From positions 679,495 to 716,514 of the forward strand of contig RQSC01000032.1 in NCBI GenBank assembly GCA_013416795.1: DNA of 37,020 nt. Reading direction: 5' to 3'. Positions 1,977 through 37,020 of the stretch are shown piece by piece. The notes under the pieces were generated by a model, which saw nothing but the letters and a program-made list of their open reading frames with translations, was not told where the DNA came from and searched no databases. The stretch is from Prasinococcaceae sp. CCMP 1430 (Eukaryota > Plantae > Prasinodermophyta). Within the stretch, counting starts at the first letter, position 1, and each line of letters starts with the position of its first letter. Position numbers and translations under genes: made by a program.

Positions 1977-2590
1977 GACGGTATCGAGAGTACTAAACAG
2001 ATTGCATGAGCGGAGCGTGCCCGGAACAGCGCTTCGAAGGCCCTGGAACAACGTGTCGGTCCCCATCATCCCATCGCCTCATCGGCTCGCGCATCCCCGT
2101 GGGGATCGAGCTCGGATCGTGTGGACGACGTGGCCACGCCACGCCGGGTCTCCCGTGGTTGGCTTTGCATGAGGTGTTGGGGGTGCGAGGTGAGGTTTTA
2201 AGGGTTGTCGCGTGCGTAGGGTTTGAAATATTCATGAGACGCCATTCGGCGGCGCCGCGCGCGCGTTCCCGCCACACGTCTCGGAGCGCGCGCCGCGCGC
2301 GCGCGAGGCAAGGGGCAGGTGGAGGGGCGAGCTGCGCGCCGGCGCCGTGCGGGCGAGGAGCTGCGGCGGCGGTACGCAAGGACGGGCAGGCGCGGTGCGC
2401 GGCCCTGCCTGTCGTCCCATCCGATCCGTGGGTGGGTCGGAGTGGGGAGGTGACAGGGGCAAGGGCTCGGAGCGGAGCCGCGCGCTCGGCGGGGAGGCGC
2501 ATCGACGGGGCGCTGGTCGCCGCGCGACAGCAGCAGCGACACACCCCTTGGCCGGGGCCGCTCGGGCGAGCAGAAAGGCGTGCTATCGCC

Positions 2591-2982
2591 ATGGCCAAGG
2601 GTGGCATGGACCATCAACGCACTGTGAGCTTCTCTGACCAACATGGCAGGGTGCGTGTGGCGTTGCTAGATGCGACGTGGATGCGCGTGCCCGCGCCACC
2701 CCCGCTGCCAACGCCGCCGACGCCGCCGGCGCTCACCCGCGCCACAGCGCTCATCGCGCTATCAATTGCACCGACTGACAGGCGCACATGGCGCTGCTCT
2801 GACTGTCCCCTGTCTCGCCTTCCTCGCAGTGTCTGACCGAGGTGTTTGAGATAGAGCGGCGAAAGAGGAAGAGGCGCGAGACCGCGGAGCCGCGCGCCCC
2901 GGCCCTCTTGATCGCGCTGAGCGTGCTCATATGCGGCGTGATCCTGCTCTCCGGGCTCATTACTGCCGTGCGCCGGCGATGA
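2591..2982 (+). CDS. Two-exon ~70-aa tail-anchored protein with RVxF-type PP1-docking motif (exons 2591-2650, 2830-2982)
   Basis: Phase-0 intron GTGCGT(2651)..CGCAG(2829) gives MAKGGMDHQRTVSFSDQHGR|CLTEVFEIERRKRKRRETAEPRAPALLIALSVLICGVILLSGLITAVRRR*. C-terminal hydrophobic helix followed by RRR. The exon 1 frame is open further upstream, so the start could be earlier. Confidence 0.65.
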
Positions 2983-3151
2983 CTCCCCGCACGACGCCTA
3001 CGTTCGCTCGCTAATACAATCTCATGTCCTGACAGCGAACTCATTCGCTCACAGCACACCACCGCAACTGATACCCTCGCCAGCCTGCTCGGGGCGATCC
3101 GGGGAGGTGATGCCGCGAATACGTCGTCGAACTGGCGCCCGCGCGCCGCGC

Positions 3152-5053
3152 TCACTTGGCAGCGAACTTCATGCGTGCGCGTTGCGCCTCCTGCATGCGC
3201 TGCGCCTGCGCTCTGATGGCCGTCACCTCTTCGATGCACTTCTTGGAGGCCTTGGCCTTGCCGAGAGCCTTGAAGGTGAGGGCCTGAGAGACGAGGAGGT
3301 CTGCCACCACCGGATGGTCCTCGCCTGCCGCGTGCTTCGCCGCCGCCACCGCGCGCGCGTGCAGAGGCTCGGCCGCGGTGTGCTTTCCTTGCTCGCGGTG
3401 CAGCGAGGCGAGCAGGTTGGAGACCGCCGCCGTCTGCAGGTGGTCCTCGCCGAGGTTGGTCGCCGTGCACTCTAGAAGCCGCTCGAGCAAAGGCTCGGCC
3501 AGCGCGAGCTTGCCCTGCCGCCTGTAGCAGTGTGCCAGCGCGCCGGCCACCGCGGCGCTCTCCGGGTGCATCTCACCGCGCGCACATGTTGCGTGCTCGA
3601 GTGCGCGCTCGTACTCGCCCTCCGCCTCCTCCATCTTGCCATGCGACAACAGCACACCTGCCAGCCGCGAACGCGCCTTGGAGGCGCACGACAGCGCCTC
3701 GCGCTGCGCCTCGGGCATCTCAGGCTGCGCCGGCACCGCGTCCGCGTCGTCCGCCGAGGCCGGGCCATCAGCGGCCGCCTCCGGCGCGGCAGCGTCATCG
3801 GCGGCATCGCCCGCCTCCGCGACTTTGGTCGCGTGCCGCTCGGCGTCCTCAGCGCGCTCGCGCAGCATCGCCTCAGCCCCCGCCTTGTCGTCCGCCTCGT
3901 CGAGCAGCTCGACGAAATTGCCGAGCGTGCGCACCGTGTTCGGGTGCTCGGCCCCAAGCGCGGCCTCGCTGTAGGCCAACGCCTGCTCCATCAGAGGACG
4001 GGCCTCGTCGTAGCGGCCCTGCATGCGCAGCAGCGTGGCGAGGTTGTTGATGGCGCGCGCCGTCTCGATGTGCTCCTTGCCCTTGTGAATCTCGTTGAGC
4101 GAGATGACCCTCTTCATCGGGCCCTCGGCCTCAACGTAGCGCTTCTGATGGTAGCGCGCGTCGGCTACCCGGCCCAGCAGCAGGCAGAGGTCGTAGGCAT
4201 CGCGCCCCAGTCGCGCCTCGGCGAGCTCGAGCGCCTTGGTGAAGGCGAGCTCCGCGGCCGCATACTCGCGCCGCGCGAGCTCTCGCGCGCCGCGCTCCTC
4301 GAACATCTCCTGCAGGCGAGGTGATTGCTCGACGTCAAGCGTCGGCGATGGGCCCATCGAGGCCGCGTCCTCCTCGGCCGCCTGCGGGGGGGAAGGCTCG
4401 GCGCTCGCCTCGACGTTTGCCGAGCCAGCGCCAGCGCTCTCGGCGGGCGCATCATCTGGCTGCTGCCGATGCTCCTGCCCCTGCTCAGGCTCGGGCTCAG
4501 GCTCCTGCTCCCGCGCATGTGCCCGCGCCTGCTCCAGTGCCTGCGCCGCCGCTTGCGCCAGCGCCTGCGCCCGCGCCCCCTGCGCCAGCGCCTGCGCCTG
4601 CGCAGGCTCCTGCTCCTGCACCTGCTCCTGCTTAGGCTGCGCCTGTGCCTCAGCTTGCGCAGGCTTCCGAGCTGCGGACTTCGACTTCGACTTCTTTTTG
4701 TTGCCCTTGCCCTTGGTGGTCAGCTTCGGCTTGGCTGCCGGTGCAGACGCCGTCACCGGCGCCGGCGCCGATCGAGGCATCTGCGGCTGCGCCTGCTGCG
4801 GCGCAGCAGGCGCTTGCGCGCTCGTCGTCGACTGTGCCGGCTCGCTCGCGGCAGCCGGCTGCGGCTTCTGCTCCGCCAGAGCCTTGCGTTTCGAGAAAAC
4901 GCGGGTGCTTGTACCGCCCTCGCTCGCATCCCCCGCCCTGCCGCGGCCACGGCCGCCGCGTGGTGCGAAGATCATCACCGCGGCAACGGCGCCGAGCGCG
5001 GCCACGCCGAGCGCGGCCGCGCATAGGCGGCGCACCACCGCCGCGATCGCCAT
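3152..5053 (-). CDS. Signal-anchored TPR protein (kinesin-light-chain/TPR_10-12-like repeats)
   Basis: ATG at 5053 (MAIAAVVRRLCAAALGVAALGAVAAVMIFAP, hydrophobic anchor), then an Ala/Gln/Pro/Lys linker. Repeats such as TARAINNLATLLRMQGRYDEARPLMEQALAYSEAALGAEHPNT and GEDHPVVADLL follow. Confidence 0.8.
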   Translation of the reverse strand: MAIAAVVRRLCAAALGVAALGAVAAVMIFAPRGGRGRGRAGDASEGGTSTRVFSKRKALAEQKPQPAAASEPAQSTTSAQAPAAPQQAQPQMPRSAPAPVTASAPAAKPKLTTKGKGNKKKSKSKSAARKPAQAEAQAQPKQEQVQEQEPAQAQALAQGARAQALAQAAAQALEQARAHAREQEPEPEPEQGQEHRQQPDDAPAESAGAGSANVEASAEPSPPQAAEEDAASMGPSPTLDVEQSPRLQEMFEERGARELARREYAAAELAFTKALELAEARLGRDAYDLCLLLGRVADARYHQKRYVEAEGPMKRVISLNEIHKGKEHIETARAINNLATLLRMQGRYDEARPLMEQALAYSEAALGAEHPNTVRTLGNFVELLDEADDKAGAEAMLRERAEDAERHATKVAEAGDAADDAAAPEAAADGPASADDADAVPAQPEMPEAQREALSCASKARSRLAGVLLSHGKMEEAEGEYERALEHATCARGEMHPESAAVAGALAHCYRRQGKLALAEPLLERLLECTATNLGEDHLQTAAVSNLLASLHREQGKHTAAEPLHARAVAAAKHAAGEDHPVVADLLVSQALTFKALGKAKASKKCIEEVTAIRAQAQRMQEAQRARMKFAAK

Positions 5054-5692
5054 CACGCCTCCTCCCGCCCCCCGGCGGCCGCGCGCGCGCACCCGCCTCC
5101 CCTCGCGTCTCCTCGCCTCCGTTCGCGCGCGGAGTGGCCGCCCAACCCGCTCGCCGCCTCTGCCAGCGCTGCAATCCTCAAGCCCCTCCTCCCTGCCCCC
5201 GCACCTCCCCTCGCGCGCGCGCGTGAGCGCCGGGGTCTTATCTTTACGAGATCTGCCGCCGCTGGCCCGCCCGGTGCGACCCACCCGGCGCCGCGGGCGC
5301 GAATTCAACCTGATATATATATGGCTCGCCCGTGGGATAGTTTTTCGAATTTTAGATCTGCAAAAGTCACGCGGGGACATTATTGGAGATCCAGTGAACG
5401 CGCCGCGCGAGCGCAGCCGCGCAGCCGCGATACCAACTGCTCGGAGCGTTCTCGAGCGTCTGCAGCCGGTAGCTCTCCCGCCGCGCGACGGAGGGGCACG
5501 GAGGGGCACGGTGGCGGGGGGTAAGTGGCGACGCGGGAAGGGGAGGAGACGCCATACGAGACGGCACGGACGGCAAGGGGAAGACCCCAACCACCCCCCT
5601 ACCTCCCGCGGGAGGGATGCGCGGGAGGGAGGGCGAGGCGCGCCGCGGCCGCGCGGCCGCGCGCTGCTGAGCGCCGGTTTTGGTCCGCCGCG

Positions 5693-5935
5693 ATGGGCTG
5701 CGGGTGCAGCACCGTCGCGGCGGCCGATGCCAGCAGCGATGCCCGCACGGGCTCGGCCACGGCCGAGCGAGTAGGCGATTCGCATTTGCGCGCGAGTGTC
5801 AGCAACGGCGGCCTCTCGGACGCCAGCATTGACGGCGGCGGCAAGCCCAACCTTGCTCCGGGCTGCGAGGTTGAGAGTGAGAACGAGCAGAGGGAGCGCC
5901 TACAGAGGTCTGTCGAGTGCCGCAGGTCCCTGAAG
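5693..5935 (+). CDS. First exon of an unidentified gene with MGCGCS N-terminal acylation motif; remainder lost in the poly-C run
   Basis: ATG 5693 reads MGCGCSTVAAAD..., is open for 81 codons and ends at the strong donor AAG|GTACGT (5936). Divergent from the TPR gene. Confidence 0.45.
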
Positions 5936-6107
5936 GTACGTGCGGCCAGCGATCGGCCCTGTGCACAGAGCGCGTCCCACGGAGCATCCTGCCGCGCCCG
6001 CTCGGATGGCTGGCCGCTGACCGGAGGCGCTCGCACCGCGTCCACCTCGGGCGCGTGCACCCCCGTGCGCGTTCGTGCCGGTGCGAATGCGCTCGCACAC
6101 GCCCCCC

Positions 6108-13405
<7,298 letters not shown>

Positions 13406-13406
13406 N

Positions 13407-15669
13407 CGCTCTTGCCGACGCGGAGCTCGTCGCCGACGCTGGCGGCGGCGCGGGCGGCGCCGCGACGCTCACCGCCGCGCCCACTTTGTGGCTGTCGCCG
13501 GGGCTCATGATGTCCGCGGGCATCGCAGTCGGCGAGAGCGTCGCGGTCGCCGTCGCCGACGCGCCCGCCGGCGCGCACCTTCACACCGCGCGCGGGGGGG
13601 AGGCGCTGCCGCAGGGAGTCGCCCTGCACCAGCAAAAGCGCGAGCGGCTCGCGTCATCGCCGCGCACGCCGCCACCGGCACGCTCGCCCTCGGGTGGCAA
13701 GGGGAGGGGCGCTGCGATGCCGCTCGGCGTGGACGTGTCGCTCGCTCCGCGCTCCCTTGCGGCGCTGTGCGGGGTCCAGGAGGCCGAGGAGGGGGGGGAG
13801 GCCGCGTGCGAGCAGCGCGCGGGCAACGCGCTGCTTGTCGCCAAGGCATGGCCCGCGGCGGCGCTGCCGCCGCGGCACTGCGCGGCGTCCGCGCAGCTGC
13901 ACGGCTCGCTCGGCGGGGGCGGGGGCGCCCTATCGCTCACGGCCAGANNNNNNNNNNNNNNNNNNNNNNNNNNNNNNNNNNNNNNNNNNNNNNNNNNNNN
14001 NNNNNNNNNNNNNNNNNNNNNNNNNNNNNNNNNNNNNNNNNNNNNNNNNNNNNNNNNNNNNNNNNNNNNNNNNNNNNNNNNNNNNNNNNNNNNNNNNNNN
14101 NNNNNNNNNNNNNNNNNNNNNNNNNNNNNNNGCAAGACGGCGCTCGCGCGCGCGGCCGCGCGCGAGGCCGGGGCCTCTTTGCTGTGGGCGTCCGCGCCAG
14201 AGCTCATCGGCTCAGCGCCCGGCGAGTCGGAGGCGGCCGTGCGCGCGCTCTTCGCGGCGGCGCGCGACGCCGCCCCCGCGCTGCTCTTCCTGGACGAGCT
14301 CGACGCCGCCGCGCCAGCGCGCGGCGAGGGTGGAGCGTTCGGCGGCGCCGACGCGGAGAGCTCCATGGAGTCGCGCGTGCTACAGACGCTGCTTGCCGAG
14401 ATGGACGCGCTTGGCGCGGGGGGCGGCGGCGAGGCAGCGCTGCCGCCGGTGGTGGTGCTGGCGGCGACGAATCGGCCGGCGGCGCTGGACGCCGCGCTGC
14501 GGCGGCCCGGGCGCTTCGACGTGGAGGTGGAGGTGCCGCCGCCGACACCCGCGGGGCGCCTCGCCATCCTACACGCGCGCCTACGCGCCGTGGAGCGCGC
14601 TGGCGCGCTGGACGTCGCCGAGGCGGAACTCGCGCGGCTGGCGGCGGGCACCCACGGCTTCGTGGCCGCCGACCTGGCAGCTCTTGTCGACGAGGCGAGC
14701 CTAGAGGCGCTCAGGGAGCACGTGGAGCGGCAGCGCGAGGGATGCCACCCAGGGGAACAGGGCAAGCAGCAGCAGGACCAGCCGAGGCTCCTCGCGCGCC
14801 ACCTCGCGGCCGCGCGGCAACGAATCTCCCCGAGCGCGCTGCGCGAGGTGGCCGTGGAGGTGCCCGACGTGCGCTGGAGCGACGTGGGCGGCCTGGAGAG
14901 CGTCAAGCAGCGCCTGCGCGAGGCGGTCGAGTGGCCGCAGGCGCACGCGCAGGCGCTAGCGCGCGTGGGCGCACGCGCGCCGAGAGGCACGCTGCTGTTC
15001 GGGCCGCCGGGCTGCTCCAAGACTATGCTCGCCAAGGCGGTCGCCACCGAATGCGGCCTCAGCTTCATCTCGGTCAAGGGCCCCGAGCTTCTCTCCAAGT
15101 ACGTCGGCGAGTCCGAAAAGGCCGTGCGCTCGCTCTTCGCCCGCGCGCGCGCGGCGGCCCCCGCGGTGGTGTTCTTCGACGAGATCGACTCGCTCGCGGC
15201 CGCGCGCGCCGCGGACGGAGCGGGCGACTCGACCGGCGTGGGCGAGCGCGTGCTGTCGCAGCTGCTCACCGAAATGGACGGCGCGAGCCCGCTGGCGGGC
15301 GTTACGGTGCTGGCAGCCACCAACCGCCCCGACATGGTCGACGCGGCGCTGCTGCGACCTGGGCGCTTCGACCGTCTGCTGCGCGTGCGCGCGCCCGACG
15401 CGGCGGGCCGCGAGGCCGTCCTTCGCGCTTGCCGCGTGCCGCTCGCGGGCGACGTCGACGTCGCCGCGGTCGCCGCGCGCACCCACGGCTTCACAGGCGC
15501 CGACCTCGCGGCGCTGCTCCAGGAGGCCGCCCTGCGTGCGGCCGAGGAGGGCGAAGGGGGCGCCGAGGCGGTGACAAGCGCGCACGTCGAGGAGGCGCTC
15601 GTCCGAGCGCGGCCCACGCCGATCGACCCTGCGCTGGATGCCATCTACGCGCGCTTCGAGCGCGGCTGA
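13407..15669 (+). CDS. AFG2: AFG2/SPATA5 (Drg1)-type double AAA+ ATPase, 5'-incomplete, with an internal N gap
   Basis: D1: (G)[30 protein letters not shown]2: [74 protein letters not shown] and ISPSALRE are typical of AFG2. Confidence 0.85.
13948..14131. other. Assembly gap (184 N) inside AFG2
   Basis: Run of n. Confidence 0.99.
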
Positions 15670-15715
15670 GCTCGCCCGCGTGCGTCACCTCTTAATTACA
15701 CATGTACACAGCCCG

Positions 15716-15850
15716 TCACTTGAGCGCGCGCTTCGCCTCCGCCGACAGGCTGAGGCCTGACCACGCGGCGCCGACGGCGACCGCGACGAGCAGTCCGGCC
15801 TTGAGCGCGCCTGAGCAGCGCCGCGCGTGCGGCGAGTGCGCCGTGAACGG
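15716..15850 (-). CDS. Putative terminal exon of a small membrane protein (..ALKAGLLVAVAVGAAWSGLSLSAEAKRALK*)
   Basis: G/C-ending codons and a hydrophobic helix. Candidate CAG acceptors at 15851 or 15811. TGTAA poly(A) signal just downstream (ttaca 15696-15700). Upstream exon not identified. Confidence 0.35.
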   Translation of the reverse strand, partial: PFTAHSPHARRCSGALKAGLLVAVAVGAAWSGLSLSAEAKRALK

Positions 15851-16256
15851 CTGGCGGCGGCGCGGGGGCCCGCCGGGTCACCGCCGCCGCACGCGCGCCG
15901 CTGCGCAGCGCGTCCCAGCAACCACGACTGCCTCTCACAGGAGGGAGCCGCCAGGCGCCGCAGCCCCACCACCTCCGCCGCCGCGGCGCGCTGTGCCGCG
16001 CCCGAGCCGCACGACAGTGACGGCCGACGCCAGTGACCGCCGACGCCGGCCTGCGCGCGGTACCTGACGAGCTTCCCGTATCTATCGCAGAAATTTTTCG
16101 GAGGGTCATTTCCGCGTTTTGGGGGATAGCGAGAAGTACAATTCGAACCCCGCGTGCGAAGTGCGAAGTACGGAGTGCGTCCCCGCTGCAACGGATATCC
16201 GCGGTTTCGGCCCGCGCGTGTCCCCGCTCCGCGCCGCGCCGCGCCGTACCGCGGAA

Positions 16257-16360
16257 TTAGGGTTTAGGATCAAACCTCGAGTATCTGCTGGGCGTAGTGC
16301 CATCTGTGCTCTGTCATCTGATTCTGATGGATTGATGGTACGACGGGCACGTGGGCCCAC
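16257..16360. promoter_or_regulatory. Telo-box (AAACCCTAA on - strand) plus site-II/TCP-like palindrome GTGGGCCCAC
   Basis: ttagggtttagg at 16257-16268 and gtgggcccac at 16351-16360, in a locally lower-GC stretch between the 3' ends of AFG2 and P5CS. Confidence 0.35.
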
Positions 16361-16729
16361 GGCGCGGGAGTAAGGGTTCGTCCGACCGTCACGGAGGGTT
16401 TCTGAGCGGCCGTGCGCGCGCGCGCACCGGTGCGAGGGCGCGACGAGGACGAGGGCGCGGCGCGAGAGGGGCTGCTGTTGGTTGGTGGCGGTGCCGATCG
16501 TTGTCAATGCTTACCACGCGCGCGGCGCACACGGCGCCGTGAAGGGGCGCGGCGCTGGGCGCGGCCGCGCGCAGGTTTAGTTGCGCAGTGGAGACTCTCC
16601 TCTCGTCTTGGCGGTGCAGCAATCCCTTCGCACTTCGAAGCTACTCGTGGTGCTCCCACGCCGCACCGGCCGCGTCGAGGGAATTGTCGCCGGGTGTGCG
16701 CGACAACCTCGGTCACGCGAGGCGATGCC

Positions 16730-19018
16730 TCACGCCAGCTTCCGGTGCACGTACTTGATATCCTTGTCCTTTGCGACCACCTGTCCAGTGCCGCGGAGCA
16801 GCCAGCGCGTGGTGAGCAGCCCCTCCACGCCCACCGGCCCCCGCGCGTGTATGCGACTGGTGGAGATGCCTACCTCGGCGCCCAGGCCGAAGCGGAAGCC
16901 GTCAGCGAAGCGCGTCGAAGCGTTGTGGAAGACGCACGCGGCGTCCACGCCCGCGAGCCAGCGCTCGGCGACCTCCGCGTCCTCCGTGATCACCATCTCG
17001 GTGTGGCCGCTCCCGAAGCGGTGCGCGTGCTCGATGGCCGCCTCCACGCCGGAGACCACCTCGACCGTGCAGCGGTTGTCGCCGTACTCGTGGTGCAGCG
17101 AGGAGGCCTCCGCAGGCTTCAGGCCCAGGTCTTGCGCCGCGCCGGACGCCACGCAGCCGGGGCCCGCCCCTGGGTACACGCCCGCCTCCTGCAGCCGCTG
17201 CACGAGCCCGGCGGCGCGGCCGTCTGTCAACAGCTCCTCGTGCAGCAGCAGCGTCTCCATGGCGTTGCACGCCGCCGGATAATCCAGCTTGGCGTCCGCG
17301 GCCAGCGTGGCGGCCTTGTCCATGTCGGCCGCCTTGTCGACGAACACGTGGCAGACGCCGTCGGCGTGCCCGAGCACGGGGATTTTGGTGGAGGACTGGA
17401 TGTGGCTCACCAGCGCGTTTGAGCCGCGCGGGATGACCAGATCGATGACGTCGTCGAGAGCGAGCAGCTCGCTGATGGTGTCGCGGCTGGTCACCAGCCC
17501 GATGACCCCCGGGTCGACATCGGGCGCCAGCGCGGCCACCACCGCGCGGTGCATGGCCTTGTTGCTGCGCGTGGCCTCCTTGCCGCCCTTCAGCAGCAGG
17601 CCGTTGCCTGAGCGGAGCGCGAGCGCCGCGATCTGCGGCAGCGCGTCCGGGCGGCTCTCGAAGATGATCATGAGCACGCCCAGCGGGCTGGTGCGCTGCT
17701 CGAGCGTCAGGCCCTCGGCGACCTCCATGCGCGAGAGGAGGCGGTCGAGCGGCTCGTCCTGGTCGGCGATGGAGCGGATGCCCGCGGCGAGCTGCTGGAT
17801 CTTGCCCGGCTTGAGGCGGAGCCGGTTGAGCAGGTGCTCGTCCGTGCCATTCGCGAGCGCGTCGTTCACGTCGAGCACGTTCTCCTCGAGGATTTCGCGC
17901 TCGCGCGCGAGCAGCGAGTCGGCCACGCGACGCAGCAGCGCGGCGCGCTTCTCCGAGGACAGCGCCTGCAGCGCGCGCGAGGCGGCGCGGGCGGCCTCGG
18001 CCATCTCGCGCGACTGAGCGCCGCCGGCGCCGCTGGCGACGGCCTCCACCGCCGCCGAGTCGGCGCCCGTCAGGTTTTTCATGGACGTCACGCGCACGAA
18101 GAGCGCCTTGGCCGCCGTGGTGTCGAAGAGCGTGCCGGCCGGCTCGCCCTTGAGCACGACGCGCGTGAGCATGTCGTGAATCTTGCCGGTGGCGATGACC
18201 ACCGGCGTGCCCGCGCGCGCGGCCATCCACGCCGCGTCCACCTTGGCGGCCATGCCGCCGCGCCCCAGCCGGCTCTTGCCCTTGAACTCGACGGCCGCGT
18301 CGTGCACTTCTGGCGAGTACGTCGTGATGAGCTTCGAGGCCGGATCGGCGGGGTCACCGGTGTACAGGCCCTGCACGTCGGAGAGGATGACGAGCAGGTC
18401 TGCCCTGAGCTCGAGCGCGAGCAGCGCGGCGAGCGAGTCGTTGTCCCAGAAGATGCCCTGGTCGTCCGAGTTGGGCGCGCGGCGCGTGGTGATGGCGTCG
18501 TTCTCGTTGAAGATGGGCACCACGCCGAGCTCGTGCAGCTCGGAGACCATCTCGCGGAGGCGGTCGCGGAACTCGGGATTGGCGAAGTCGTTGTCGGTGA
18601 CCAGGATCTGCGAGGTGGTGATGTCCAGCTGACTGAAGAGCGCGTCGTACAGCGACATCAGCCCGCTCTGGCCCACCCCCGCCGCCGCGCGGCCGCTCAT
18701 GCCGGGCCTGCCCTCCATGCGCGCGAGGTCCGCCACGCTCGAGCGCAGCACCTGCTGGTGGCGCAGGCGCTGGCGGCCCACGCCGACGGCGCCGCTGGAC
18801 ACGAGGACCACCTCCTTCCCCGCGCGCTTCAGCGCGTCGATCTGCTCGCAGACCGCGCCGATGCGCCCCAGCGCCAGCTTGCCGTCATACCCGCGGGTCA
18901 CGACCGCCGTGCCGAGCTTGACGATGACGCGCTTCGCGTCGCGGATGAAAGAGCGCGACGGGTCCGTGCACGTGCTCGAGAACCGCTCCACCACCGACTC
19001 GGCGCTCACGTCCCCCAT
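16730..19018 (-). CDS. P5CS: Bifunctional delta-1-pyrroline-5-carboxylate synthase (glutamate 5-kinase + gamma-glutamyl phosphate reductase), intronless
   Basis: KRVIVKLGTAVVT, LVSSGAVG, NENDAI, GIFWDNDSLAALLALEL, GRGGMAAKV, IIFESRPDALPQIA, DYPAACNAMET, NASTRFADGFRFGLGAEVGISTSRIHARGPVGVEGL. Confidence 0.97.
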   Translation of the reverse strand: MGDVSAESVVERFSSTCTDPSRSFIRDAKRVIVKLGTAVVTRGYDGKLALGRIGAVCEQIDALKRAGKEVVLVSSGAVGVGRQRLRHQQVLRSSVADLARMEGRPGMSGRAAAGVGQSGLMSLYDALFSQLDITTSQILVTDNDFANPEFRDRLREMVSELHELGVVPIFNENDAITTRRAPNSDDQGIFWDNDSLAALLALELRADLLVILSDVQGLYTGDPADPASKLITTYSPEVHDAAVEFKGKSRLGRGGMAAKVDAAWMAARAGTPVVIATGKIHDMLTRVVLKGEPAGTLFDTTAAKALFVRVTSMKNLTGADSAAVEAVASGAGGAQSREMAEAARAASRALQALSSEKRAALLRRVADSLLAREREILEENVLDVNDALANGTDEHLLNRLRLKPGKIQQLAAGIRSIADQDEPLDRLLSRMEVAEGLTLEQRTSPLGVLMIIFESRPDALPQIAALALRSGNGLLLKGGKEATRSNKAMHRAVVAALAPDVDPGVIGLVTSRDTISELLALDDVIDLVIPRGSNALVSHIQSSTKIPVLGHADGVCHVFVDKAADMDKAATLAADAKLDYPAACNAMETLLLHEELLTDGRAAGLVQRLQEAGVYPGAGPGCVASGAAQDLGLKPAEASSLHHEYGDNRCTVEVVSGVEAAIEHAHRFGSGHTEMVITEDAEVAERWLAGVDAACVFHNASTRFADGFRFGLGAEVGISTSRIHARGPVGVEGLLTTRWLLRGTGQVVAKDKDIKYVHRKLA

Positions 19019-19101
19019 GGCCGCGACTCCGCCCCTCTCCCCCTCACGCCCCCTTCGCGCGCACGTGCGGACGTGCGTGGGTTCTCACGACCGGGACGTA
19101 G

Positions 19102-19809
19102 GCGCACGATGGACGCCTCGTGGTGCGTGGCACGCTGCAACGCGCCAACGTGCCCAACCGCAACGGGCGCGTGTACCCCAAGCACGTCATTAAGCGGGAA
19201 ATAGAACGCTACGCCCGGCGTACGCACCTGGGGGCGACCTCGAGCGGCCGGCGGAGGTTAGCGATGGGGCGTGGCACCGGAGCGTTTGGCGAACTCGACC
19301 ATCCACCTCCGGAGTCGAAGTGGTTCAGAAAGACCAACCGCGCGAACGTGTCGCACGTGTTGCTTGAGTACGGCTGGGAGGGCGACGACCTGGTGGGCGT
19401 GGTGGAGGTCCTGCCCACAGAGTGCGGCAACGTGCTGCGTGAGCTCTCCCTGATGGGAGAGGAGCTCGGTGTGTCCAGCCGCGGATGGGCGTCATTGCTC
19501 CCGGCGTCGGGCGGCACCGCTGTCATTCAGGAAGACTTCGAGCTCATCACCTTCGACTTCGTGCCCGATCCGAGCACCGCTGGTGCCTACTTGCGCCCTG
19601 TGGACCCGCAGCACCGCCTGACGCTCGAGCCACTCGCCACGGTGCTTTCACGTCTCGCGCGCGTGCCGGCGTCCGACGACGAATGCGAGACTGATGAGAA
19701 GAGGGGATGTCGCGAAAGGGGTGCAGAGGCCCCCACGAAGGCCTTCGAGCGCACGGACAAGCGGGTCGCTGCCAGGCGCGCTGCCGTAGTCGCGCACGCG
19801 TGGACCTGA
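19102..19809 (+). CDS. T4 gp21-like prohead core/maturation serine protease; true start unresolved
   Basis: GTLQRANVPNRNGRVYP, AFGELDHP (catalytic His), LGVSSRG (catalytic Ser), FELITFDFVPDPST (catalytic Asp), WEGDDLVGVVEVL. These match T4 gp21 NRNKRLYP / ALGELNHP / GVSSRG / DAVWGPS. The frame opens after TAG at 19099-19101, a possible splice acceptor. Confidence 0.85.
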   Translation, partial: AHDGRLVVRGTLQRANVPNRNGRVYPKHVIKREIERYARRTHLGATSSGRRRLAMGRGTGAFGELDHPPPESKWFRKTNRANVSHVLLEYGWEGDDLVGVVEVLPTECGNVLRELSLMGEELGVSSRGWASLLPASGGTAVIQEDFELITFDFVPDPSTAGAYLRPVDPQHRLTLEPLATVLSRLARVPASDDECETDEKRGCRERGAEAPTKAFERTDKRVAARRAAVVAHAWT

Positions 19810-20167: not shown

Positions 20168-20745
20168 TTAGTCGAAGAGGTCGAAGCCCATGTCCTCCTC
20201 CTCCTCCTCCTCTTCCGGCTCCGGCTCCGGCTCAGCCGCCGCGGCGGCGGCGCCGCCGGCGCCGGCAGCGGCNNNNNNNNNNNNNNNNNNNNNNNNNNNN
20301 NNNNNNNNNNNNNNNNNNNNNNNNNNNNNNNNNNNNNNNNNNNNNNNNNNNNNNNNNNNNNNNNNNNNNNNNNNNNNNNNNNNNNNNNNNNNNNNNNNNN
20401 NNNNNNNNNNNNNNNNNNNNNNNNNNNNNNNNNNNNNNNNNNNNNNNNNNNNNNNNNNNNNNNNNNNNNNNNNNNNNNNNNNNNNNNNNNNNNNNNNNNN
20501 NNNNNNNNNNNNNNNNNNNNNNNNNNNNNNNNNNNNNNNNNNNNNNNNNNNNNNNNNNNNNNNNNNNNNNNNNNNNNNNNNNNNNCGTCCGCGCGCGCCC
20601 GCGCCCGCGCGCCGCCGCGCGCGCCCTCATTTTTTCTCCTCTCGGCGCCGCGCGCGCGAGCGCCGCGCGCGCCCCCACGCACCGAGATCTCGACCTCGCC
20701 GTCGTGGAGGATGAGGGCCGCGAGCACGCAGGCCTGCTCCGACAT
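20168..20745 (-). CDS. RPLP1: 60S acidic ribosomal protein P1; exon 1 at 20745-20683, middle part in the N gap, C-terminus at 20272-20168
   Basis: MSEQACVLAALILHDGEVEIS|GTGCGT donor. C-terminus AAAGAGGAAAAAAEPEPEPEEEEEEEDMGFDLFD*. TGTAA signal at 20045-20049 (-). Confidence 0.92.
20273..20585. other. Assembly gap (313 N) inside RPLP1
   Basis: Run of n. Confidence 0.99.
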
Positions 20746-25434: not shown

Positions 25435-26625
25435 CTACTGCTGCGCGCATCGGACCTGACCGTTGTTCAACATCCGTAGGACGTCTTCGTCGCTCAGTCT
25501 CGGCCGGGGGGCGTTGCGCGGGTCGTCCTCACCGTTCGGCAGTGGCGGATACGGGGCGCCGCACAACTGGTCTTCGCGCAAGGCAGGCGCGTGAGACTTG
25601 TCGAAGGCCGTGGCGCCATCGAACATCCGAGCGCCTCTGTGCACCCTTGAGAGGTTCCACTCCGTGAGCGGCTGGTTGAATGAAGTGGCGTCCCGAAACA
25701 TGCCCCACGAGTTCCACAGGCTGGGGAGTTTCCACTGCGCGAGCGGCTGGTTGAACGACCTGGCGCTGTAGAACATTTCGCACATGTCTGTGACGCGCGA
25801 GACGTCCCACTGCGCGAGCGGCTGGTTGAACGAGGAAGCCTCGCGGAACATGTTGCACATGTCCGTGACGCTCGAGACGTCCCACTGCTCGAGTGGCTGG
25901 TTGAAGTTGCAGGCAGTGTAGAACATGTCGCTCATGATCGTGACGCTCGAGACGTCCCACTGCGCGATCGGCTGGTTGAACGAGGTGGCGCTGGAGAACA
26001 TGGCGCCCATATTCTCCACGCTGGAGACCTTACCTGCCCACCCGTTCAGCGGCTGGTTGAAGGATTCTGCCGAGTAGAACATCCTCGCCATACTCGTCAC
26101 GCTGGAGACGTCCCAACTCTCGAGCGGGTGATTGAAAGGAGTGCCTTCAAACATGCTCTCCATGGTCGTCACACTGGAAACGTCCCACCTGTCGAGCGGC
26201 TGGTCGAAACGCGTCCTGTCGAACAAGCTCCGCATGTTGGTCACGTTGGAGACCAAGTCTGCCCACCCGTTCAGCGGCTGGTTGAAGGCCGAGGCGCCAA
26301 AGAACATGCAGTCCATATTCGTCACCCTGGAGACGTCCCACTGCTCGAGCGGCTTGTTGAAGGTGGTCGCGTCTATGAACATGTTCTGCTACGAACAGTG
26401 CAACGACTGCAGGGTGAGGCTCTACAGCAGTCACTTGAGGAGCGTAGGGCGCTTCTCCGGCGGGTACAAGCACTGCGACGTGACGTCCCACTTGCCGATT
26501 GCTGAGCCGAACTCGGCCTTCGCAGCCTCCGGGTCCTCGCACCACTTCTTGACTGCCGGCCTGAGAGTGAAGTCGTCGAAGGCGGGCCTCCCCGCCGCGT
26601 TGAGCAGGAAGCCCCCTCCGCCCAT
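25435..26625 (-). CDS. DUF285 (BspA-like/PARCEL) repeat protein; N-terminal cap separated from the repeats by in-frame stops (possible pseudogene or unusual intron)
   Basis: Ten repeats of FNQPLxxWDVSxVTxMxxMFxxAxx in 25435-26382. Upstream segment from ATG 26625 reads FDDFTLRPAVKKWCEDPEAAKAEFGSAIGKWDVTS, the typical cap. The same frame then has TGA, TAG, TAG before QNMF. Confidence 0.75.
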
Positions 26626-34247: not shown

Positions 34248-36633
34248 TCAGTTCTTCTTGGACTTCTTCTTGGACTTCTTCTTCTTGTCCTTCTTCTTCT
34301 TGTCCTTCGTCTTCTTGTCCTTCTTCTTCTTGTCCTTCTTCTTCTTGTCCTTCTTCTTGGACTTCTCCTTCTTGGACTCCTTCTTGGACTTCTTCTTCGC
34401 CGGCTCCGGCTCCTCCATGCACATCTTGCTCTTGTAGACGCAGCCATCCTCCTTGCCGCACTTCTTCTTCGAGAGGCCGTCGCAGTGGGACGGGTAGTAC
34501 CAGTCCTCAATGCACATCTTGTTCTCGTAGACGCAGCCGTCCTCCTTGCCGCACTTCTTCTTCGAGAGGCCGTCGCAGTGGGAGTAGTGCGGATAGTGGT
34601 CGTCGTACGGATAGTGCGGGTAGTGGTCGTCGTAAGGATAGTGCGGGTAGTGGTCGTCGTGCGGCTCCTCCACGCACATCTTGTTCTCGTAGACGCAGCC
34701 GTCCTCCTTGCCGCACTTCTTCTTCGAGAGGCCGTCGCAGTGGGAGTAGTATGGGTAGTGGTCGTCCGCCGGATAGTGCGGGTAGTGGTCGTCCTCCGGG
34801 TAGTGCGGGTAGTGGTCGTCGTAAGGATAGTGCGGGTAGTGGTCGTCCTCCGGGTAGTGCGGGTAGTGGTCGTCGTACGGATAGTGCGGGTAGTGGTCGT
34901 CCTCCGGGTAGTGCGGGTAGTGGTCGTCGTACGGATAGTGCGGGTAGTGGTCGTCGAACGCGCCCGTGCAGTTGGTCGTGTTGGCGCCACCGGCGCACGG
35001 CGAAGCAGGATCGAACAGCTCATCGTCATTGTACCAGGAGTAGTCATGATCGCAGTGAGCCAAGCATCCCTGCGCAGAGCGAAAACGCCGTCAAGTGCGA
35101 GCGCATGGATGTGTGTTAGCCGCAAAGGTCACTTCATGCTGCCGCCGCGGATGAACTCGCGCGCGCGCGCGCGCGCAACACGCACGCCAAGGCGGACGAA
35201 GCTAAGCTGAGCATGCGCAGCCGGGCACTCACCTCGACGTCCGCACCATCATGGTTGTAATGGCACTCCATGCATGGCTGGCAAAAGTACATGTCGCTCG
35301 TGTAGGGCATTCCGGGGCAATCTTCAGTGAAGCACTCTATCGCGCAGAATTCGTCCGGAGGGCATCCAGAATTGCGACCGTCGCACAAGCCTTCGTACTC
35401 CGGGTAGTGCGGGTACTGCTCGTCAGACGGATGCATGCCGTCGAAAAAGCACCGGCCCTCCTCCCACCCGCACATGCTGTATGACTTGCACTCGCTCTTC
35501 TTGAAGCCCGACTGCTCGCAGAAGATCTCCTCCTCCGATAGTTCGTACGTGTAGTCGTCCGGACGGTACGAGTAGTGGTCGTCCGTGTAGGGCGGATAAT
35601 CGGAGTATGCGTAAGACGGACTGTAGTAGCACCCGCCGTCGGTCCACTCGCACATGCTGTATGAGTTGCACTCGCTCTTCTTGAAGCCCGACTGCTCGCA
35701 AAAGCGCTCGCTCGCCGCTCTGGTGGTGTCGTACAGTGACTCGTGTTCGTGTTCGTTCTCAACCCACATGTGCTCATCCTCCGGGTAGTGCGGGTAATGC
35801 TCGTCATGGGGTTCCTCCACGCACATCTTGTTCTCGTAGACGCAGCCGTCCTCCTTGCCGCACTTCTTCTTCGAGAGGCCGTCGCAGTGGGAGTGGTATG
35901 GGTAGTGGTCGTCCTCCGGATAGTGCGGATAGTGGTCGTACTCCGGGTAGTGCGGGTAGTGGTCGTCCTCCGGGTAGTGCGGGTAGTGGTCGTCCTCAGG
36001 ATAGTGCGGGTAGTGGTCGTACTCCCCCATCACGCCCATCACCAGCAGGAGGCCCATCACGCCCATCACCAGCAGGAGGCCCATCACGCCCAGGTCGGAG
36101 TAGTCGTAAGACGGATTGTACCAGCACTCGCCGTCCGCCCACTCGCACATGGGGTATGACTTGCACTCGCTCTTCTTGAAGCCCGACTCCTCGCAGAAGT
36201 GCTCGCCAAACGAGTCCGCGTAGTCACCGTGGTCGTAATAGTCGTAGTATTCGTGCGCGGGCCCGTCCTCCGGATACGCCGGGTAGTGCCAGTCCCCGTC
36301 GTGTGAGTAGTGGTCGTCCTCCGGGTAGTGCGGGTAGTGGTCGTGGTGGTCCGAGTGGTCGTAGTATTCGTGCTCGGGCCCGTCCTCCGCATACGGCGGG
36401 TAGTGCCAGTCCTCTTCGTGCGGGTAGTGGTCGTCCTCGGGGTAGTGCGGGTAGTGGTCGTCCTCCGGGTAAGCGCCGGCAGCGGCCGCGGCGGGCGCGG
36501 CGCCAGCGCCCGAGCCGACGTTCGAGAGCATGTCGCCGATGTCCTGGTTGGCGAGGAACTTCTCGAAGAGAGTCGGCCAGTACGACTCGACCTCAATGCC
36601 GGCGGCGGTCACGATCGCCTTGATCTTGTCGGC
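34248..36633 (-). CDS. His/Tyr/Asp/Pro repeat protein with 4-Cys modules and poly-Lys tail, N-terminally fused to an RPLP1 exon (exons 36633-35233, 35069-34248; 5' exon outside the window)
   Basis: Acceptor CCCACAG|GCCGACAAG gives ADKIKAIVTAAGIEVESYWPTLFEKFL..VGSG (RPLP1 core), continuing in frame into YPEDDHYPH repeats. The phase-0 intron GTGAGT(35232)..GCGCAG(35070) joins ..DVE|GCLAHC.., completing a Cys-rich domain. Confidence 0.7.
34419..35889 (-). repeat. Four near-identical 69-nt coding repeats (HCDGLSKKKCGKEDGCVYENKMC) plus 27-nt YPHYPEDDH tandem repeats
   Basis: Copies at ~34419-34487, 34512-34580, 34674-34742 and 35821-35889. 27-nt units TACCCGCACTAY(CCGGAG/CCTTAC/CCGTAC)GACGACCAC lie between them. 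Confidence 0.9.
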
Positions 36634-37020
36634 CTGTGGGGACGCACGCGGTCTTACGAGTCAGACACAATCACGTATCGCAGGCGGCACAGGCACGCGC
36701 GGCCACCCGACGGCGACCCCGGGGGGGGCGGGCGCGCGCGCGCATCACGGCCGGGCTGGACACGTGTGCGCCTTTCGCGGCCGCCAACGCCTTCGCCGGC
36801 GTCTCACAGCCGACGTCGCCGATGGCGATGCCGCGTGGCGGGCCCAGCATGGTGGGCCGAGCCGACGGCACGCACATCGCCCGCAGCCGCCCCAAAACAA
36901 AATGTCCGCACGCGCGCCGGCGCCGTAGGGCGCGCGCGCGGCGCGAGCGCGCGCGCAGGTCCGGGCCCGGCGCGCGGACTCCGCGAGCAAGGCCGCGGGG
37001 GGAAAGGGAGGGGACTCCTG

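What the first reader, a model, noticed from the sequence alone, without database searches (positions are those of the whole stretch)
19102..19809. Phage T4 gp21-type prohead maturation protease embedded among housekeeping genes of an alga
Seen: the ORF has NRNGRVYP, GELDHP, GVSSRG and TFDFVPDPS in the order and spacing of T4 gp21. Established: gp21 is the His-Ser-Asp capsid maturation protease of T4-like phages and cleaves after Glu. All three catalytic motifs are intact. The neighbours are ordinary nuclear genes (P5CS, RPLP1), and no capsid, portal or terminase gene is visible in the readable part of the window. Inference: this is a horizontally acquired, domesticated phage protease with an unknown cellular substrate or assembly, rather than a provirus. 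It has a ~60-aa charged C-terminal extension after the protease fold.
Basis: partly seen in the sequence, partly recalled or inferred. Interest (0 to 1): 0.8.

Follow-up and report, generated by a model that had tools for sequence, protein, structure and literature searches.

The report
Phage-derived protease gene in green alga
The stretch is the second exon of an ordinary nuclear gene of the green alga Prasinoderma coloniale, encoding a protease that green algae took from a T4-like bacteriophage long ago and still share; it is real and curious, but already catalogued, and its cellular job is unknown.

Summary
Window 19102-19809 (+) encodes a T4 gp21-type (MEROPS S77, Pfam PF03420) serine protease domain, and its His, Ser and Asp positions are intact. 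It is exon 2, not a whole gene. Exon 1 (5693-5935) supplies the start codon and an N-terminal MGCGCS lipidation-type motif. Exon 1 plus exon 2 equal, residue for residue, the published Prasinoderma coloniale model PRCOL_00001436 (316 aa). In two Tara scaffolds the exons are 254-262 nt apart. In the window they are 13.2 kb apart, separated by a 7.3-kb poly-C run and a 5.6-kb block carrying P5CS. Four metagenome contigs and a near-identical P5CS transcript place that block elsewhere, so the P5CS adjacency is most likely an assembly artefact. The RPLP neighbour is real. The gene belongs to one monophyletic green-algal clade (bootstrap 100) that includes Pterosperma, Pyramimonas, Pycnococcus, Tetraselmis, Chlamydomonas and Volvox. 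That clade is sister to prohead proteases of Microcystis phage Mel-JY01-like T4-type phages. Its members have introns, conserved cellular synteny and no capsid genes nearby. This points to one ancient transfer followed by domestication, not a provirus. S77 in Chlamydomonas is already listed in a review, with no known role. The likely function is a membrane-tethered, self-processing protease (inferred).

The parts
5693..5935 (+). Exon 1 of the S77 protease gene (81 codons). It holds the ATG and the N-terminal MGCGCS motif (Gly2, Cys3, Cys5, Ser6), then a disordered linker and the start of a helix. The donor GT is at 5936-5937.
   Evidence: Sequence. 100% identical to residues 1-81 of P0315, the P. 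coloniale model PRCOL_00001436-RA. The same exon is intact in L001 and L008. No Pfam family matches it.
5936..6108 (+). 5' part of the intron. It is colinear with the Tara scaffolds up to a C-rich tract.
   Evidence: blastn of L001 and L008 against the window. 3% divergence from L001.
6109..13406 (.). 7297-nt run of C followed by a single N. It is not biological sequence and lies inside the intron as the window stands.
   Evidence: L001 and L008 have only short C-rich tracts, the longest C run about 12 bases, at this point.
13407..19046 (-). 5.6-kb block that most likely belongs elsewhere in the genome. It carries P5CS (16730-19018, minus, 762 aa) and a second minus-strand ORF (13581-15644, with an N run). 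The block is cut mid-gene at its low end.
   Evidence: Four contigs, L004-L007 (99% identical), match only 13407-19046 and have different flanks. The polyA transcript L003 (99.96% identical) leaves the window at 19046 and is colinear with L004 over its whole length. Pfam AA_kinase + Aldedh.
19047..19101 (+). 3' part of the intron, ending in the acceptor AG at 19100-19101. Bases 19029-19046 are an 18-nt C-rich stretch matched both by the intron of L001/L008 and by the P5CS 5' UTR.
19102..19809 (+). Exon 2 (235 codons plus stop); this is the finding. It encodes the S77 protease domain and the C-terminal tail.
19126..19602 (+). Match to Pfam Peptidase_S77 (profile positions 47-191 of 198). Conserved His is at 19300-19302, Ser at 19474-19476 and Asp at 19555-19557 (H148, S206, D233 of the 316-aa protein).
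   Evidence: These positions are invariant in 51 aligned sequences. H148 and S206 align with the two Ala positions of the crystallised T4 chain, and D233 with its Asp. pLDDT is above 90.
19228..19278 (+). Insertion specific to the Prasinoderma lineage (about 13-17 aa, protein residues 124-140), predicted to be a disordered loop.
   Evidence: Alignment A1. pLDDT is below 50. The Tara strain shares it.
19663..19806 (+). Charged, disordered C-terminal tail (protein residues 269-316). It lacks the [VI]ACE, NKVxP and LRxSW motifs found in the tails of other sub-clades.
3152..5150 (-). Upstream neighbour supported by independent contigs: a TPR-repeat protein gene, divergent from exon 1. The high bound is approximate.
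   Evidence: Pfam TPR_12 and related families. The same gene is in the same place in L001 and L008.
20168..20272 (-). Downstream neighbour: the 3' end of an acidic ribosomal protein (Ribosomal_60s) gene, convergent with the protease gene. It runs into the N run 20273-20585.
   Evidence: Pfam PF00428. The same arrangement is in L001, L008 and L009.

Best explanation
Window 19102-19809 is exon 2 of the nuclear gene PRCOL_00001436 of Prasinoderma coloniale. The gene has two exons (5693-5935 and 19102-19809) and encodes a 316-aa protein.

The protein is built as follows: an N-terminal Gly2/Cys motif of the kind that is N-myristoylated and S-palmitoylated; a disordered linker of about 55 residues; one helix; a T4 gp21-type (S77) serine protease domain with the His, Ser and Asp positions intact; and a short disordered tail.

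It is one member of a monophyletic family of cellular genes of green algae. The family descends from a single ancient capture of the prohead protease of a T4-like phage, whose nearest living relatives are Microcystis phage Mel-JY01, Flavobacterium phage immuto and about-200-aa marine sequences. After capture the gene gained introns, a lipid-anchor signal and tails.

Shown here: homology, fold, conserved catalytic positions, gene structure, clade, cellular context.

Inferred: the protein is an active endopeptidase held on the cytosolic face of a membrane by its acylated N-terminus. Like gp21 it would be kept in check by its N-terminal region and activated by self-cleavage, cutting after Glu, on cellular substrates that are still unknown and not on a capsid.

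The 13.2 kb that separate the exons in the window (a poly-C run plus a P5CS block) are most likely an assembly artefact.
For: Homology and fold:
- PF03420 57 bits against a cut-off of 27; phrog_207; 5jbl by sequence.
- 5jbl by fold, TM 0.71, rmsd 2.0 A.
- All named hits among the top 50 BFVD matches are from tailed phages or an archaeal virus, nearly all named as prohead proteases or scaffolds.

Catalytic positions: H148, S206, S207, D226 and D233 are invariant in 51 sequences.

Gene structure:
- Exon 1 plus exon 2 are 100% identical to the 316-aa EukProt model PRCOL_00001436-RA.
- L001 and L008 carry the same exons with GT-AG introns of 254 and 262 nt.

Artefact:
- L001 and L008 jump from window 6121-6129 to 19027-19029.
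- L004-L007 and transcript L003 place the P5CS block in another context.

Family:
- Named members are Pterosperma, Pyramimonas, Pycnococcus, Tetraselmis, four Chlamydomonas species or strains, Volvox and Pleodorina.
- The algal clade has bootstrap 100; together with the Mel-JY01-type phage clade it has 96-98.
- XRN-RAMA-S77-ECH-ClpB-CHCH synteny is shared by three species-level clusters.
- Introns lie at different places in different lineages.
- MMETSP transcripts exist in four lineages.

Constraint: Prasinoderma keeps 52 of 54 columns that are invariant in the other algal members. pN/pS is 0.23-0.62.

Lipid-anchor motif: MG..(S) with Cys is present in 9 N-termini, and every complete N-terminus listed but one (P0004, whose called start may not be the true one) has 1-3 Cys in the first 12 residues.

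gp21 properties (pentamer, N-terminal block of the active site, self-cleavage, cleavage after Glu, H/S/D triad): PMC9958956 and PMC5694885.
Against: - No direct evidence of expression in P. coloniale was found. The collection holds the P5CS transcript of this strain, but no transcript-derived protein at least 90% identical to this one.
- Prasinoderma has the longest branch in the algal clade and a lineage-specific disordered insertion.
- It lacks the tail motifs of other sub-clades.
- pN/pS rests on 5-19 substitutions per comparison and cannot exclude relaxed constraint.
- Lipidation, membrane location, activity, specificity and oligomeric state are inferred from sequence pattern and from T4, not measured.
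- The trees are neighbour-joining on 178 columns. Deep nodes inside the algal clade are weak (19-72).
- I could not inspect reads, so the artefact verdict rests on other strains' contigs and one transcript.
Confidence: 0.72

Rival explanations
1. The gene is a decaying relic in the Prasinoderma lineage. It is still open, but it is no longer expressed or no longer under selection as a protease.
For: - It has the longest branch in the algal clade (0.39-0.41).
- It has a disordered insertion of about 13-17 aa and a short tail without the family's tail motifs.
- pN/pS is about 0.6 between the window and the Tara strains, with dN close to the non-coding divergence.
- No transcript-derived copy was found in the collection for this strain, and no hit that could be P. 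singulare appeared, although both have P5CS transcripts there.
Against: - Both exons and the GT-AG splice sites are intact in the window, L001 and L008, and exon 2 also in L009, with no stop or frameshift.
- 52 of 54 family-invariant columns and all catalytic positions are kept.
- pN/pS is below 1 in every comparison, and 0.23 among the Tara strains.
- The domain is predicted with pLDDT above 90.
Confidence: 0.12
2. The stretch is a piece of phage, prophage or bacterial contaminant DNA, or an endogenous element of a eukaryotic virus (mirusvirus-like or giant virus), and not a cellular gene.
For: - The domain is otherwise typical of tailed phages.
- The window is clearly mis-assembled nearby.
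- Fold search also touches herpesvirus assemblins at E about 1e-4.
Against: - G+C is 0.675, like the rest of the window and the published 69.8%.
- The GT-AG intron and eukaryote-type N-terminus are shared with Tara strains.
- The TPR and ribosomal-protein neighbours are the same in three independent assemblies.
- No head, portal, terminase or other PHROG match was found in the larger window ORFs scanned, and none is on record in the Pfam hits precomputed for the called genes around four relatives.
- The best IMG/VR match is 49% identical and covers only the domain.
- There is no sequence match to the herpes-type family.
Confidence: 0.03
3. P. coloniale acquired the gene recently and independently from a marine phage. 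Likeness to other algal genes would then reflect parallel transfers from similar phages.
For: - Marine phage-like sequences of about 200 aa are nearly as similar (46-50%) as the other algal proteins (44-57%).
- The position of Prasinoderma inside the algal clade is poorly supported.
Against: - The algal clade, including Prasinoderma, has bootstrap 100 in both trees.
- The algal members share a 5-residue insertion after the His motif, an N-terminal Gly/Cys motif and the helix-forming region before the domain. None of these is in the phage proteins.
Confidence: 0.05
4. The P5CS block really does lie in the intron in strain CCMP1413, for example as a duplicated segment. The gene would then have a 13-kb intron or be split in this strain.
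For: - This is what the window shows.
- The junction lies in an 18-nt C-rich micro-homology, which could also mediate real recombination.
Against: - The block is bounded by a 7.3-kb homopolymer and an N, and is cut mid-gene.
- The P5CS transcript, 99.96% identical to the window, follows the other context.
- The published model joins exactly these two exons.
Confidence: 0.1

Closest known systems
Bacteriophage T4 gp21 prohead core protease (MEROPS S77, Pfam PF03420, PDB 5JBL)
   Same: Same fold (TM 0.71, rmsd 2.0 A over about 150 residues). The profile match is above the curated cut-off. The His, Ser and Asp positions are conserved. A helical region precedes the domain.
   Different: - About 25-31% identity only.
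- It is encoded by a spliced nuclear gene among cellular genes, not in a head module between portal, scaffold and capsid genes.
- It carries an 81-residue N-terminal extension with a lipidation-type motif and a different tail.
- There is no capsid to work in.
- Activity, pentamer formation and Glu specificity are untested.
Prohead proteases of Microcystis phage Mel-JY01 (WWT39309.1), Flavobacterium phage immuto (QQO92118.1) and about-200-aa marine metagenome relatives
   Same: Nearest non-algal relatives: 43-50% identity over the domain, and the sister clade in both trees (bootstrap 96-98).
   Different: - These are phage genes of about 200 aa. In Mel-JY01 the gene lies between the large terminase and the T4-like capsid gene.
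- They lack the Gly/Cys N-terminus, the 5-residue insertion after the His motif, and introns.
Green-algal S77 homologues: Chlamydomonas reinhardtii XP_001697524.1, Volvox carteri VOLCADRAFT_90584, Pycnococcus provasolii XRA97838.1 ('prohead core protein serine protease'), and Pterosperma, Pyramimonas and Tetraselmis transcripts
   Same: Same clade (bootstrap 100), same domain, Cys-rich and mostly Gly2 N-terminus, nuclear and cellular context. A review lists S77 as present in Chlamydomonas and absent from Arabidopsis, with its role unknown (PMC8643629).
   Different: - Prasinoderma has the most divergent domain.
- It has its own loop insertion and its own intron position.
- It has a short tail. 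Chlamydomonadales have tails of 300-400 residues, and the Mamiellophyceae-like members have the [VI]ACE, NKVxP and LRxSW motifs.
Herpesvirus assemblin (MEROPS S21)
   Same: Distantly related fold, found by structure search only (E about 1e-4, TM 0.38-0.40).
   Different: No sequence-level match. rmsd is about 9 A. The algal protein is far closer to the phage S77 family.
Other phage-derived genes fixed in eukaryotes, such as the T-odd-phage-type mitochondrial RNA polymerase (from my own knowledge, not tested here)
   Same: A single phage gene is kept as a cellular gene long after transfer, without the rest of the phage.
   Different: Those are replication and transcription enzymes with a known organellar role. 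This is a virion-morphogenesis enzyme, and its cellular role is unknown.

Membership tests
Peptidase S77 / Pfam PF03420 (T4 gp21 prohead protease) | Sequence match to the family profile above its curated cut-off | tested here: met
   57 bits against a cut-off of 27, E 2.4e-15, profile positions 47-191 of 198. phrog_207 E 7e-29.
Peptidase S77 / Pfam PF03420 (T4 gp21 prohead protease) | gp21 fold | tested here: met
   AlphaFold model with pLDDT above 90 over residues 61-250. Best PDB match is 5jbl, TM 0.71, rmsd 2.0 A.
Peptidase S77 / Pfam PF03420 (T4 gp21 prohead protease) | Catalytic His, Ser and Asp present | tested here: met
   H148, S206 and D233 are invariant in 51 sequences and aligned to the corresponding T4 positions. 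The triad composition is taken from PMC5694885. This is a sequence-level test only.
Peptidase S77 / Pfam PF03420 (T4 gp21 prohead protease) | Encoded in a tailed-phage head-morphogenesis module and acting inside a prohead | tested here: not met
   The neighbours are cellular genes. No capsid, portal, scaffold or terminase match was found in the window, and none is on record around relatives. Compare the phage contexts.
Peptidase S77 / Pfam PF03420 (T4 gp21 prohead protease) | Cleavage after Glu, self-activation by N- or C-terminal self-cleavage, pentamer | not testable with these tools
   These properties are known for T4 and related phages. Here they are only inferred.
Cellular S77 clade of green algae | Groups inside the algal clade, apart from all phage sequences | tested here: met
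   Bootstrap 100 in NJ trees of 37 and 66 sequences.
Cellular S77 clade of green algae | N-terminal extension beginning with a Gly2/Cys-rich lipidation-type motif | tested here: met
   MGCGCS in exon 1. The same kind of motif is in Pterosperma, Pyramimonas, Pycnococcus, Tetraselmis, Chlamydomonas sp. UWO241 and others. This is a pattern match only.
Cellular S77 clade of green algae | Nuclear gene with a spliceosomal intron and cellular neighbours | tested here: met
   GT-AG intron in phase, shared by L001 and L008 and used by the published model. TPR and ribosomal-protein neighbours.
Cellular S77 clade of green algae | Long C-terminal extension with [VI]ACE, NKVxP or LRxSW motifs (these define sub-clades only) | tested here: not met
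   None of the three motifs is in the 76 residues after the DPST motif. Pycnococcus lacks them too.
Provirus or endogenous viral element | Other virus hallmark genes or element ends close by | tested here: not met
   Pfam and PHROGs scans of the larger window ORFs. The Tara scaffolds show only the TPR gene, this gene and the ribosomal protein gene.
Herpesvirus assemblin (S21) | Sequence membership in the S21 family | tested here: not met
   Only PF03420 is reported at E up to 1. The likeness to assemblins is at fold level only.

The most novel reading that the evidence does not exclude
A virion-morphogenesis enzyme of a T4-like phage was captured once, at or before the split of Prasinodermophyta and Chlorophyta. 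It was refitted as a lipid-anchored cellular protease and has been kept across green algae ever since. It would still use the phage enzyme's self-cleaving activation and Glu-directed cutting, but on host (or invading-virus) proteins at a membrane. As far as I know, that would be the first described cellular use of a caudoviral prohead protease in eukaryotes. The RING-finger fusions in one sub-clade would hint at a link to ubiquitin signalling.
Probability: 0.4. Interest if true: 0.7.

Novelty: new member of a known kind. Interest (0 to 1): 0.5.

Why it matters
Phage genes fixed in eukaryotic nuclei are rare, and a capsid-maturation protease with no capsid to mature is an unexpected one. The family is conserved from Prasinoderma to Chlamydomonas and Volvox. 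It has gained introns and a membrane-anchor signal. It sits in a model organism, Chlamydomonas, where its role is said to be unknown (PMC8643629). Its function is therefore directly approachable with existing expression and proteome data.

For genome annotation there is a practical point. The window shows how a homopolymer artefact can split a gene and create a false neighbourhood. The apparent 'ORF without a start codon next to P5CS' is in fact a normal two-exon gene.

Tried and rejected
- An exact look-up of the ORF from its GTG or from its first ATG, and of P5CS read without its stop, found nothing. The gene model was reached later, through the cluster of the 95% relative.
- NCBIfam has no model for the protein.
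- An ATG just upstream of the ORF is in another frame. I considered a frameshift and dropped the idea once the Tara scaffold showed exon 1 and a GT-AG intron.
They were compared apart, and the 316-aa protein used for alignment and folding is the database model P0315.
- dN/dS between the window and the Tara strains has too few substitutions to decide anything. My first TPR-gene control was probably out of frame and is not used.
- A Biopython bootstrap timed out. I replaced it with my own NJ and bootstrap script. No maximum-likelihood program was available.
- Literature searches for prohead protease with green algae, prasinophyte genera or domestication gave nothing relevant, and 'S77' alone was swamped by noise. 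Only 'prohead' + 'Chlorophyta' led to the Chlamydomonas protease review.
- The gp21 structure paper (PMC5093050) is not held. I therefore give no T4 residue numbers. The ones I recalled did not fit the alignment, so I discarded them.
- I did not run the large representative search, because the family was already resolved.
- Species names for the Mamiellophyceae-like clusters (P0186, P0135, L002, L019, L020) were not shown by any tool, so that label is my inference.
Full report
**1. The observation**

The + frame is open from 19102 to the stop at 19807-19809. The evidence that this is a gp21-type protease is strong:
- Pfam gives a single family, PF03420 Peptidase_S77 'prohead core protein serine protease', at 57 bits against a curated cut-off of 27.
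- PHROGs gives 'head maturation protease' at E 7e-29.
- The only solved structure matched by sequence is T4 gp21, 5jbl (E 7e-8).
- tblastn finds 2157 phage records. The best is Microcystis phage Mel-JY01 at 43% identity.

The profile match starts only at profile position 47. There is no in-frame ATG near the start of the frame, and a stop (TAG, 19099-19101) lies directly upstream.

**2. Gene structure**

A Tara Oceans scaffold 97% identical to the window (L001) explains the missing start.
- About 500 nt upstream of its copy of the ORF is an ATG exon of 81 codons. It begins MGCGCS and ends at a GT.
- The 'stop' before the ORF is the AG of the acceptor, and the intron is 254 nt, in phase.
- A second scaffold, L008, has the same structure with a 262-nt intron.

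The same exon 1 is present in the window at 5693-5935. Exon 1 and exon 2, compared separately, are each 100% identical to the matching parts of P0315. P0315 is the 316-aa EukProt protein EP00793_Prasinoderma_coloniale_P006606, model PRCOL_00001436-RA.

So the organism is Prasinoderma coloniale. Its published G+C of 69.8% fits the window (PMC7455551). The finding's start coordinate is exactly the start of exon 2. The gene is already annotated with this splice.

**3. The window is mis-assembled between the exons**

L001 and L008 are colinear with window 2298-6129 and then continue at 19027-19029. In the window the gap between these points holds three things:
- a 7297-nt run of C (6109-13405);
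- a single N;
- a 5.6-kb block (13407-19046) with P5CS and another minus-strand ORF.

Evidence that the block belongs elsewhere:
- Four independent contigs 99% identical to that block (L004-L007) match the window only between 13407 and 19046. They carry different sequence on both sides.
- At the low end they run on through a gene where the window turns into N and poly-C.
- A polyadenylated P5CS transcript, 99.96% identical to the window (L003), leaves the window at 19046. It is colinear with L004 over its full length, including 119 nt of 5' UTR.
- The junction lies in an 18-nt C-rich stretch that resembles the C-tract of the intron.

I conclude that the P5CS adjacency is most likely an assembly artefact. 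I put a real rearrangement in this strain at about 0.1. The neighbours supported by independent contigs are a divergent TPR-repeat gene and a convergent acidic ribosomal protein gene.

The other larger ORFs of the window are cellular: a GH19-like protein, PheRS beta, a DUF285 protein, lipoyl synthase and a bifunctional-nuclease-domain protein. None matches a phage family apart from DUF285-type PHROGs of unknown function.

**4. A family of cellular genes in green algae**

The word-based searches returned a set of longer proteins (250-630 aa) at 44-57% identity, lying on contigs of up to 1.2-4.5 Mb. Named members are:
- Pterosperma sp. CCMP1384 and Pyramimonas parkeae (MMETSP transcripts);
- Pycnococcus provasolii (NCBI XRA97838.1, named 'prohead core protein serine protease');
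- Tetraselmis chuii;
- Chlamydomonas reinhardtii (XP_001697524.1), C. eustigma, C. schloesseri and Chlamydomonas sp. UWO241;
- Volvox carteri, V. africanus and Pleodorina starrii.

Further MMETSP transcripts (P0186, P0135) head clusters that I take to be Mamiellophyceae. That label is inferred, because no species name was shown.

Neighbour-joining trees on 178 columns gave these results:
- All algal sequences fall in one clade with bootstrap 100. The trees held 37 and 66 sequences in all, of which 18 and 38 were algal.
- Its sister clade holds Microcystis phage Mel-JY01, Flavobacterium phage immuto and about-200-aa marine sequences (joint bootstrap 96-98).
- Cyanophage Syn19, pelagiphage HTVC008M, Caulobacter phage Cr30, a T4-like coliphage, a Vibrio phage and a Campylobacter phage lie further out.
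- Inside the algal clade, Tetraselmis plus Chlamydomonadales (bootstrap 95) separate from the prasinophyte-type sequences, which include Prasinoderma (bootstrap 66). This roughly follows the organisms, but the deep nodes are weak.

Other signs of long residence as a cellular gene:
- Three species-level clusters share the order XRN - RAMA - S77 - enoyl-CoA hydratase - ClpB - CHCH (L002, L019, L020).
- The Pycnococcus copy lies among ion-channel, thioredoxin, PsbP and transporter genes.
- The Mamiellophyceae-like genes have an intron after the RLIVYG motif. This is about ten codons downstream of the Prasinoderma intron position. Pycnococcus and several others have none there. Introns were therefore gained after the capture.

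In IMG/VR the best matches are 49% identical and cover only the domain. In Mel-JY01 the gene sits between the terminase and the T4-like capsid gene.

All this fits one old transfer from a T4-like phage followed by vertical descent. It excludes a provirus, a contaminant, or a recent private acquisition.

**5. Anatomy of the protein**

The model was built from a 51-sequence alignment (mean pLDDT 70.8). Residues 61-250 are confident, mostly above 90. In order:
- Residues 1-55 are disordered.
- A helix spans 63-82.
- The domain follows.
- Residues 124-140 form a disordered loop. This is an insertion found only in Prasinoderma and its Tara relatives.
- A short helix spans 259-268.
- The tail, 269-316, is disordered.

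The best PDB match is T4 gp21 (TM 0.71 on the target, rmsd 2.0 A). Herpesvirus assemblins follow far behind. The named viral models that match are tailed-phage prohead proteases or related head proteins.

H148, S206, S207, D226 and D233 are invariant across 51 algal and phage-like sequences. H148 and S206 align with the two positions that are Ala in the crystallised T4 chain, and D233 with a conserved Asp.

The N-terminus fits the usual N-myristoylation pattern, with Cys next to it. This kind of motif recurs in Pterosperma, Pyramimonas, Pycnococcus, Tetraselmis, P0186, UWO241 and two unnamed members. All complete N-termini in the table except P0004 have 1-3 Cys in the first 12 residues. The phage proteins have nothing of the kind.

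Tail motifs ([VI]ACE, NKVxP, LRxSW) mark sub-clades and are absent from Prasinoderma.

**6. Constraint and expression**

- Prasinoderma keeps 52 of the 54 columns that are invariant in the 15 other algal sequences.
- Both exons and the splice sites are intact in the window and in L001 and L008, and exon 2 is also intact in L009.
- pN/pS is 0.60-0.62 between the window and the Tara strains, and 0.23 among Tara strains. These rest on only 5-19 substitutions per comparison, so they are suggestive, not decisive.
- I found no transcript-derived copy for P. coloniale in the collection, although its P5CS transcript is there.
- Orthologues are transcribed in at least four other lineages.

**7. How it most likely works**

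Established for T4 gp21 (PMC9958956; PMC5694885):
- It is a pentameric serine protease with a His-Ser-Asp triad.
- Its N-terminal region blocks the active site until nine residues are self-cleaved.
- It and related phage enzymes cut after Glu, and related phage enzymes also trim their own C-terminus.

Shown here: the algal protein keeps that domain and its catalytic positions, and has added a lipidation-type N-terminus and a variable tail.

Inferred: it is a protease tethered by its acylated N-terminus to the cytosolic face of a membrane. It would be held inactive by the N-terminal helix and linker, and activated (and perhaps released) by self-cleavage. It would act on cellular substrates that cannot be named from sequence.

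My estimates are about 0.95 for the identity and history of the gene, about 0.85-0.9 for the artefact, and about 0.5 for the mechanism.

**8. What is known, and novelty**

- The gene is annotated in the published genome.
- NCBI names the Pycnococcus orthologue after the Pfam family.
- A review of Chlamydomonas proteases lists family S77 (prohead endopeptidase) as present in Chlamydomonas and absent from Arabidopsis. It adds that nothing is known of its role (PMC8643629).
- The P. coloniale genome paper does not mention it.

Within the searched library I found no paper that describes the single origin, the phage sister group, the lipidation motif or the synteny. That is only an absence in that library.

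I therefore rate the finding as a new member of a known, uncharacterised kind. It is of moderate interest.

**9. Limits and compliance**

- The trees are distance-based.
- Lipidation is a pattern match.
- No reads could be inspected.
- The N runs were not filled and their letters were not read.
T4 residue numbers that I recalled did not fit the alignment and were dropped.

Noticed in passing
window 6109-13406: A 7297-nt homopolymer of C followed by one N. It sits inside the intron of the protease gene and next to a block that is cut mid-gene. It looks like an assembly or processing artefact, not biology.
   Followed up: partly
P0389, P0390 and P0382, P0384, P0392, P0400, P0401, P0407, P0428 (tree): A long-branch sub-clade (bootstrap 100) sits inside the Mamiellophyceae-like group. 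In it the S77 domain is fused to RING-finger domains (PF00097, PF13639) or to another N-terminal region in place of the lipidation motif. The organisms are unknown.
   Followed up: no
window 25435-26382 (-): A DUF285 ('Mycoplasma protein of unknown function') repeat protein scores 291 bits. It also matches large PHROG families of unknown function.
   Followed up: no
window 34400-36210: Several internal direct repeats of 100-255 nt at 78-96% identity, overlapping long ORFs on both strands that have no family match.
   Followed up: no
window 36473-37020 and 20171-20272: The last 548 nt of the window are 98.6% identical to the part of Tara scaffold L008 that lies where the window has its N run 20273-20585. 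Pfam finds the N-terminal half of a Ribosomal_60s protein near 36470-36606 (-) and the C-terminal half at 20171-20272 (-). This suggests a displaced or duplicated piece. The letters were not read or used, because N runs are not to be filled.
   Followed up: no
L010 7155-7382 (Microcystis phage Mel-JY01): The phage closest to the algal family carries an annotated ribosomal protein S21 (RpsU) gene two genes after its prohead protease.
   Followed up: no
L002 10665-10693: In the 1.56-Mb contig, the match to transcript P0186 changes frame within the tail-coding part of the orthologue (overlapping tblastn pieces). This could be a second short intron or a polishing error. It was not resolved.
   Followed up: no
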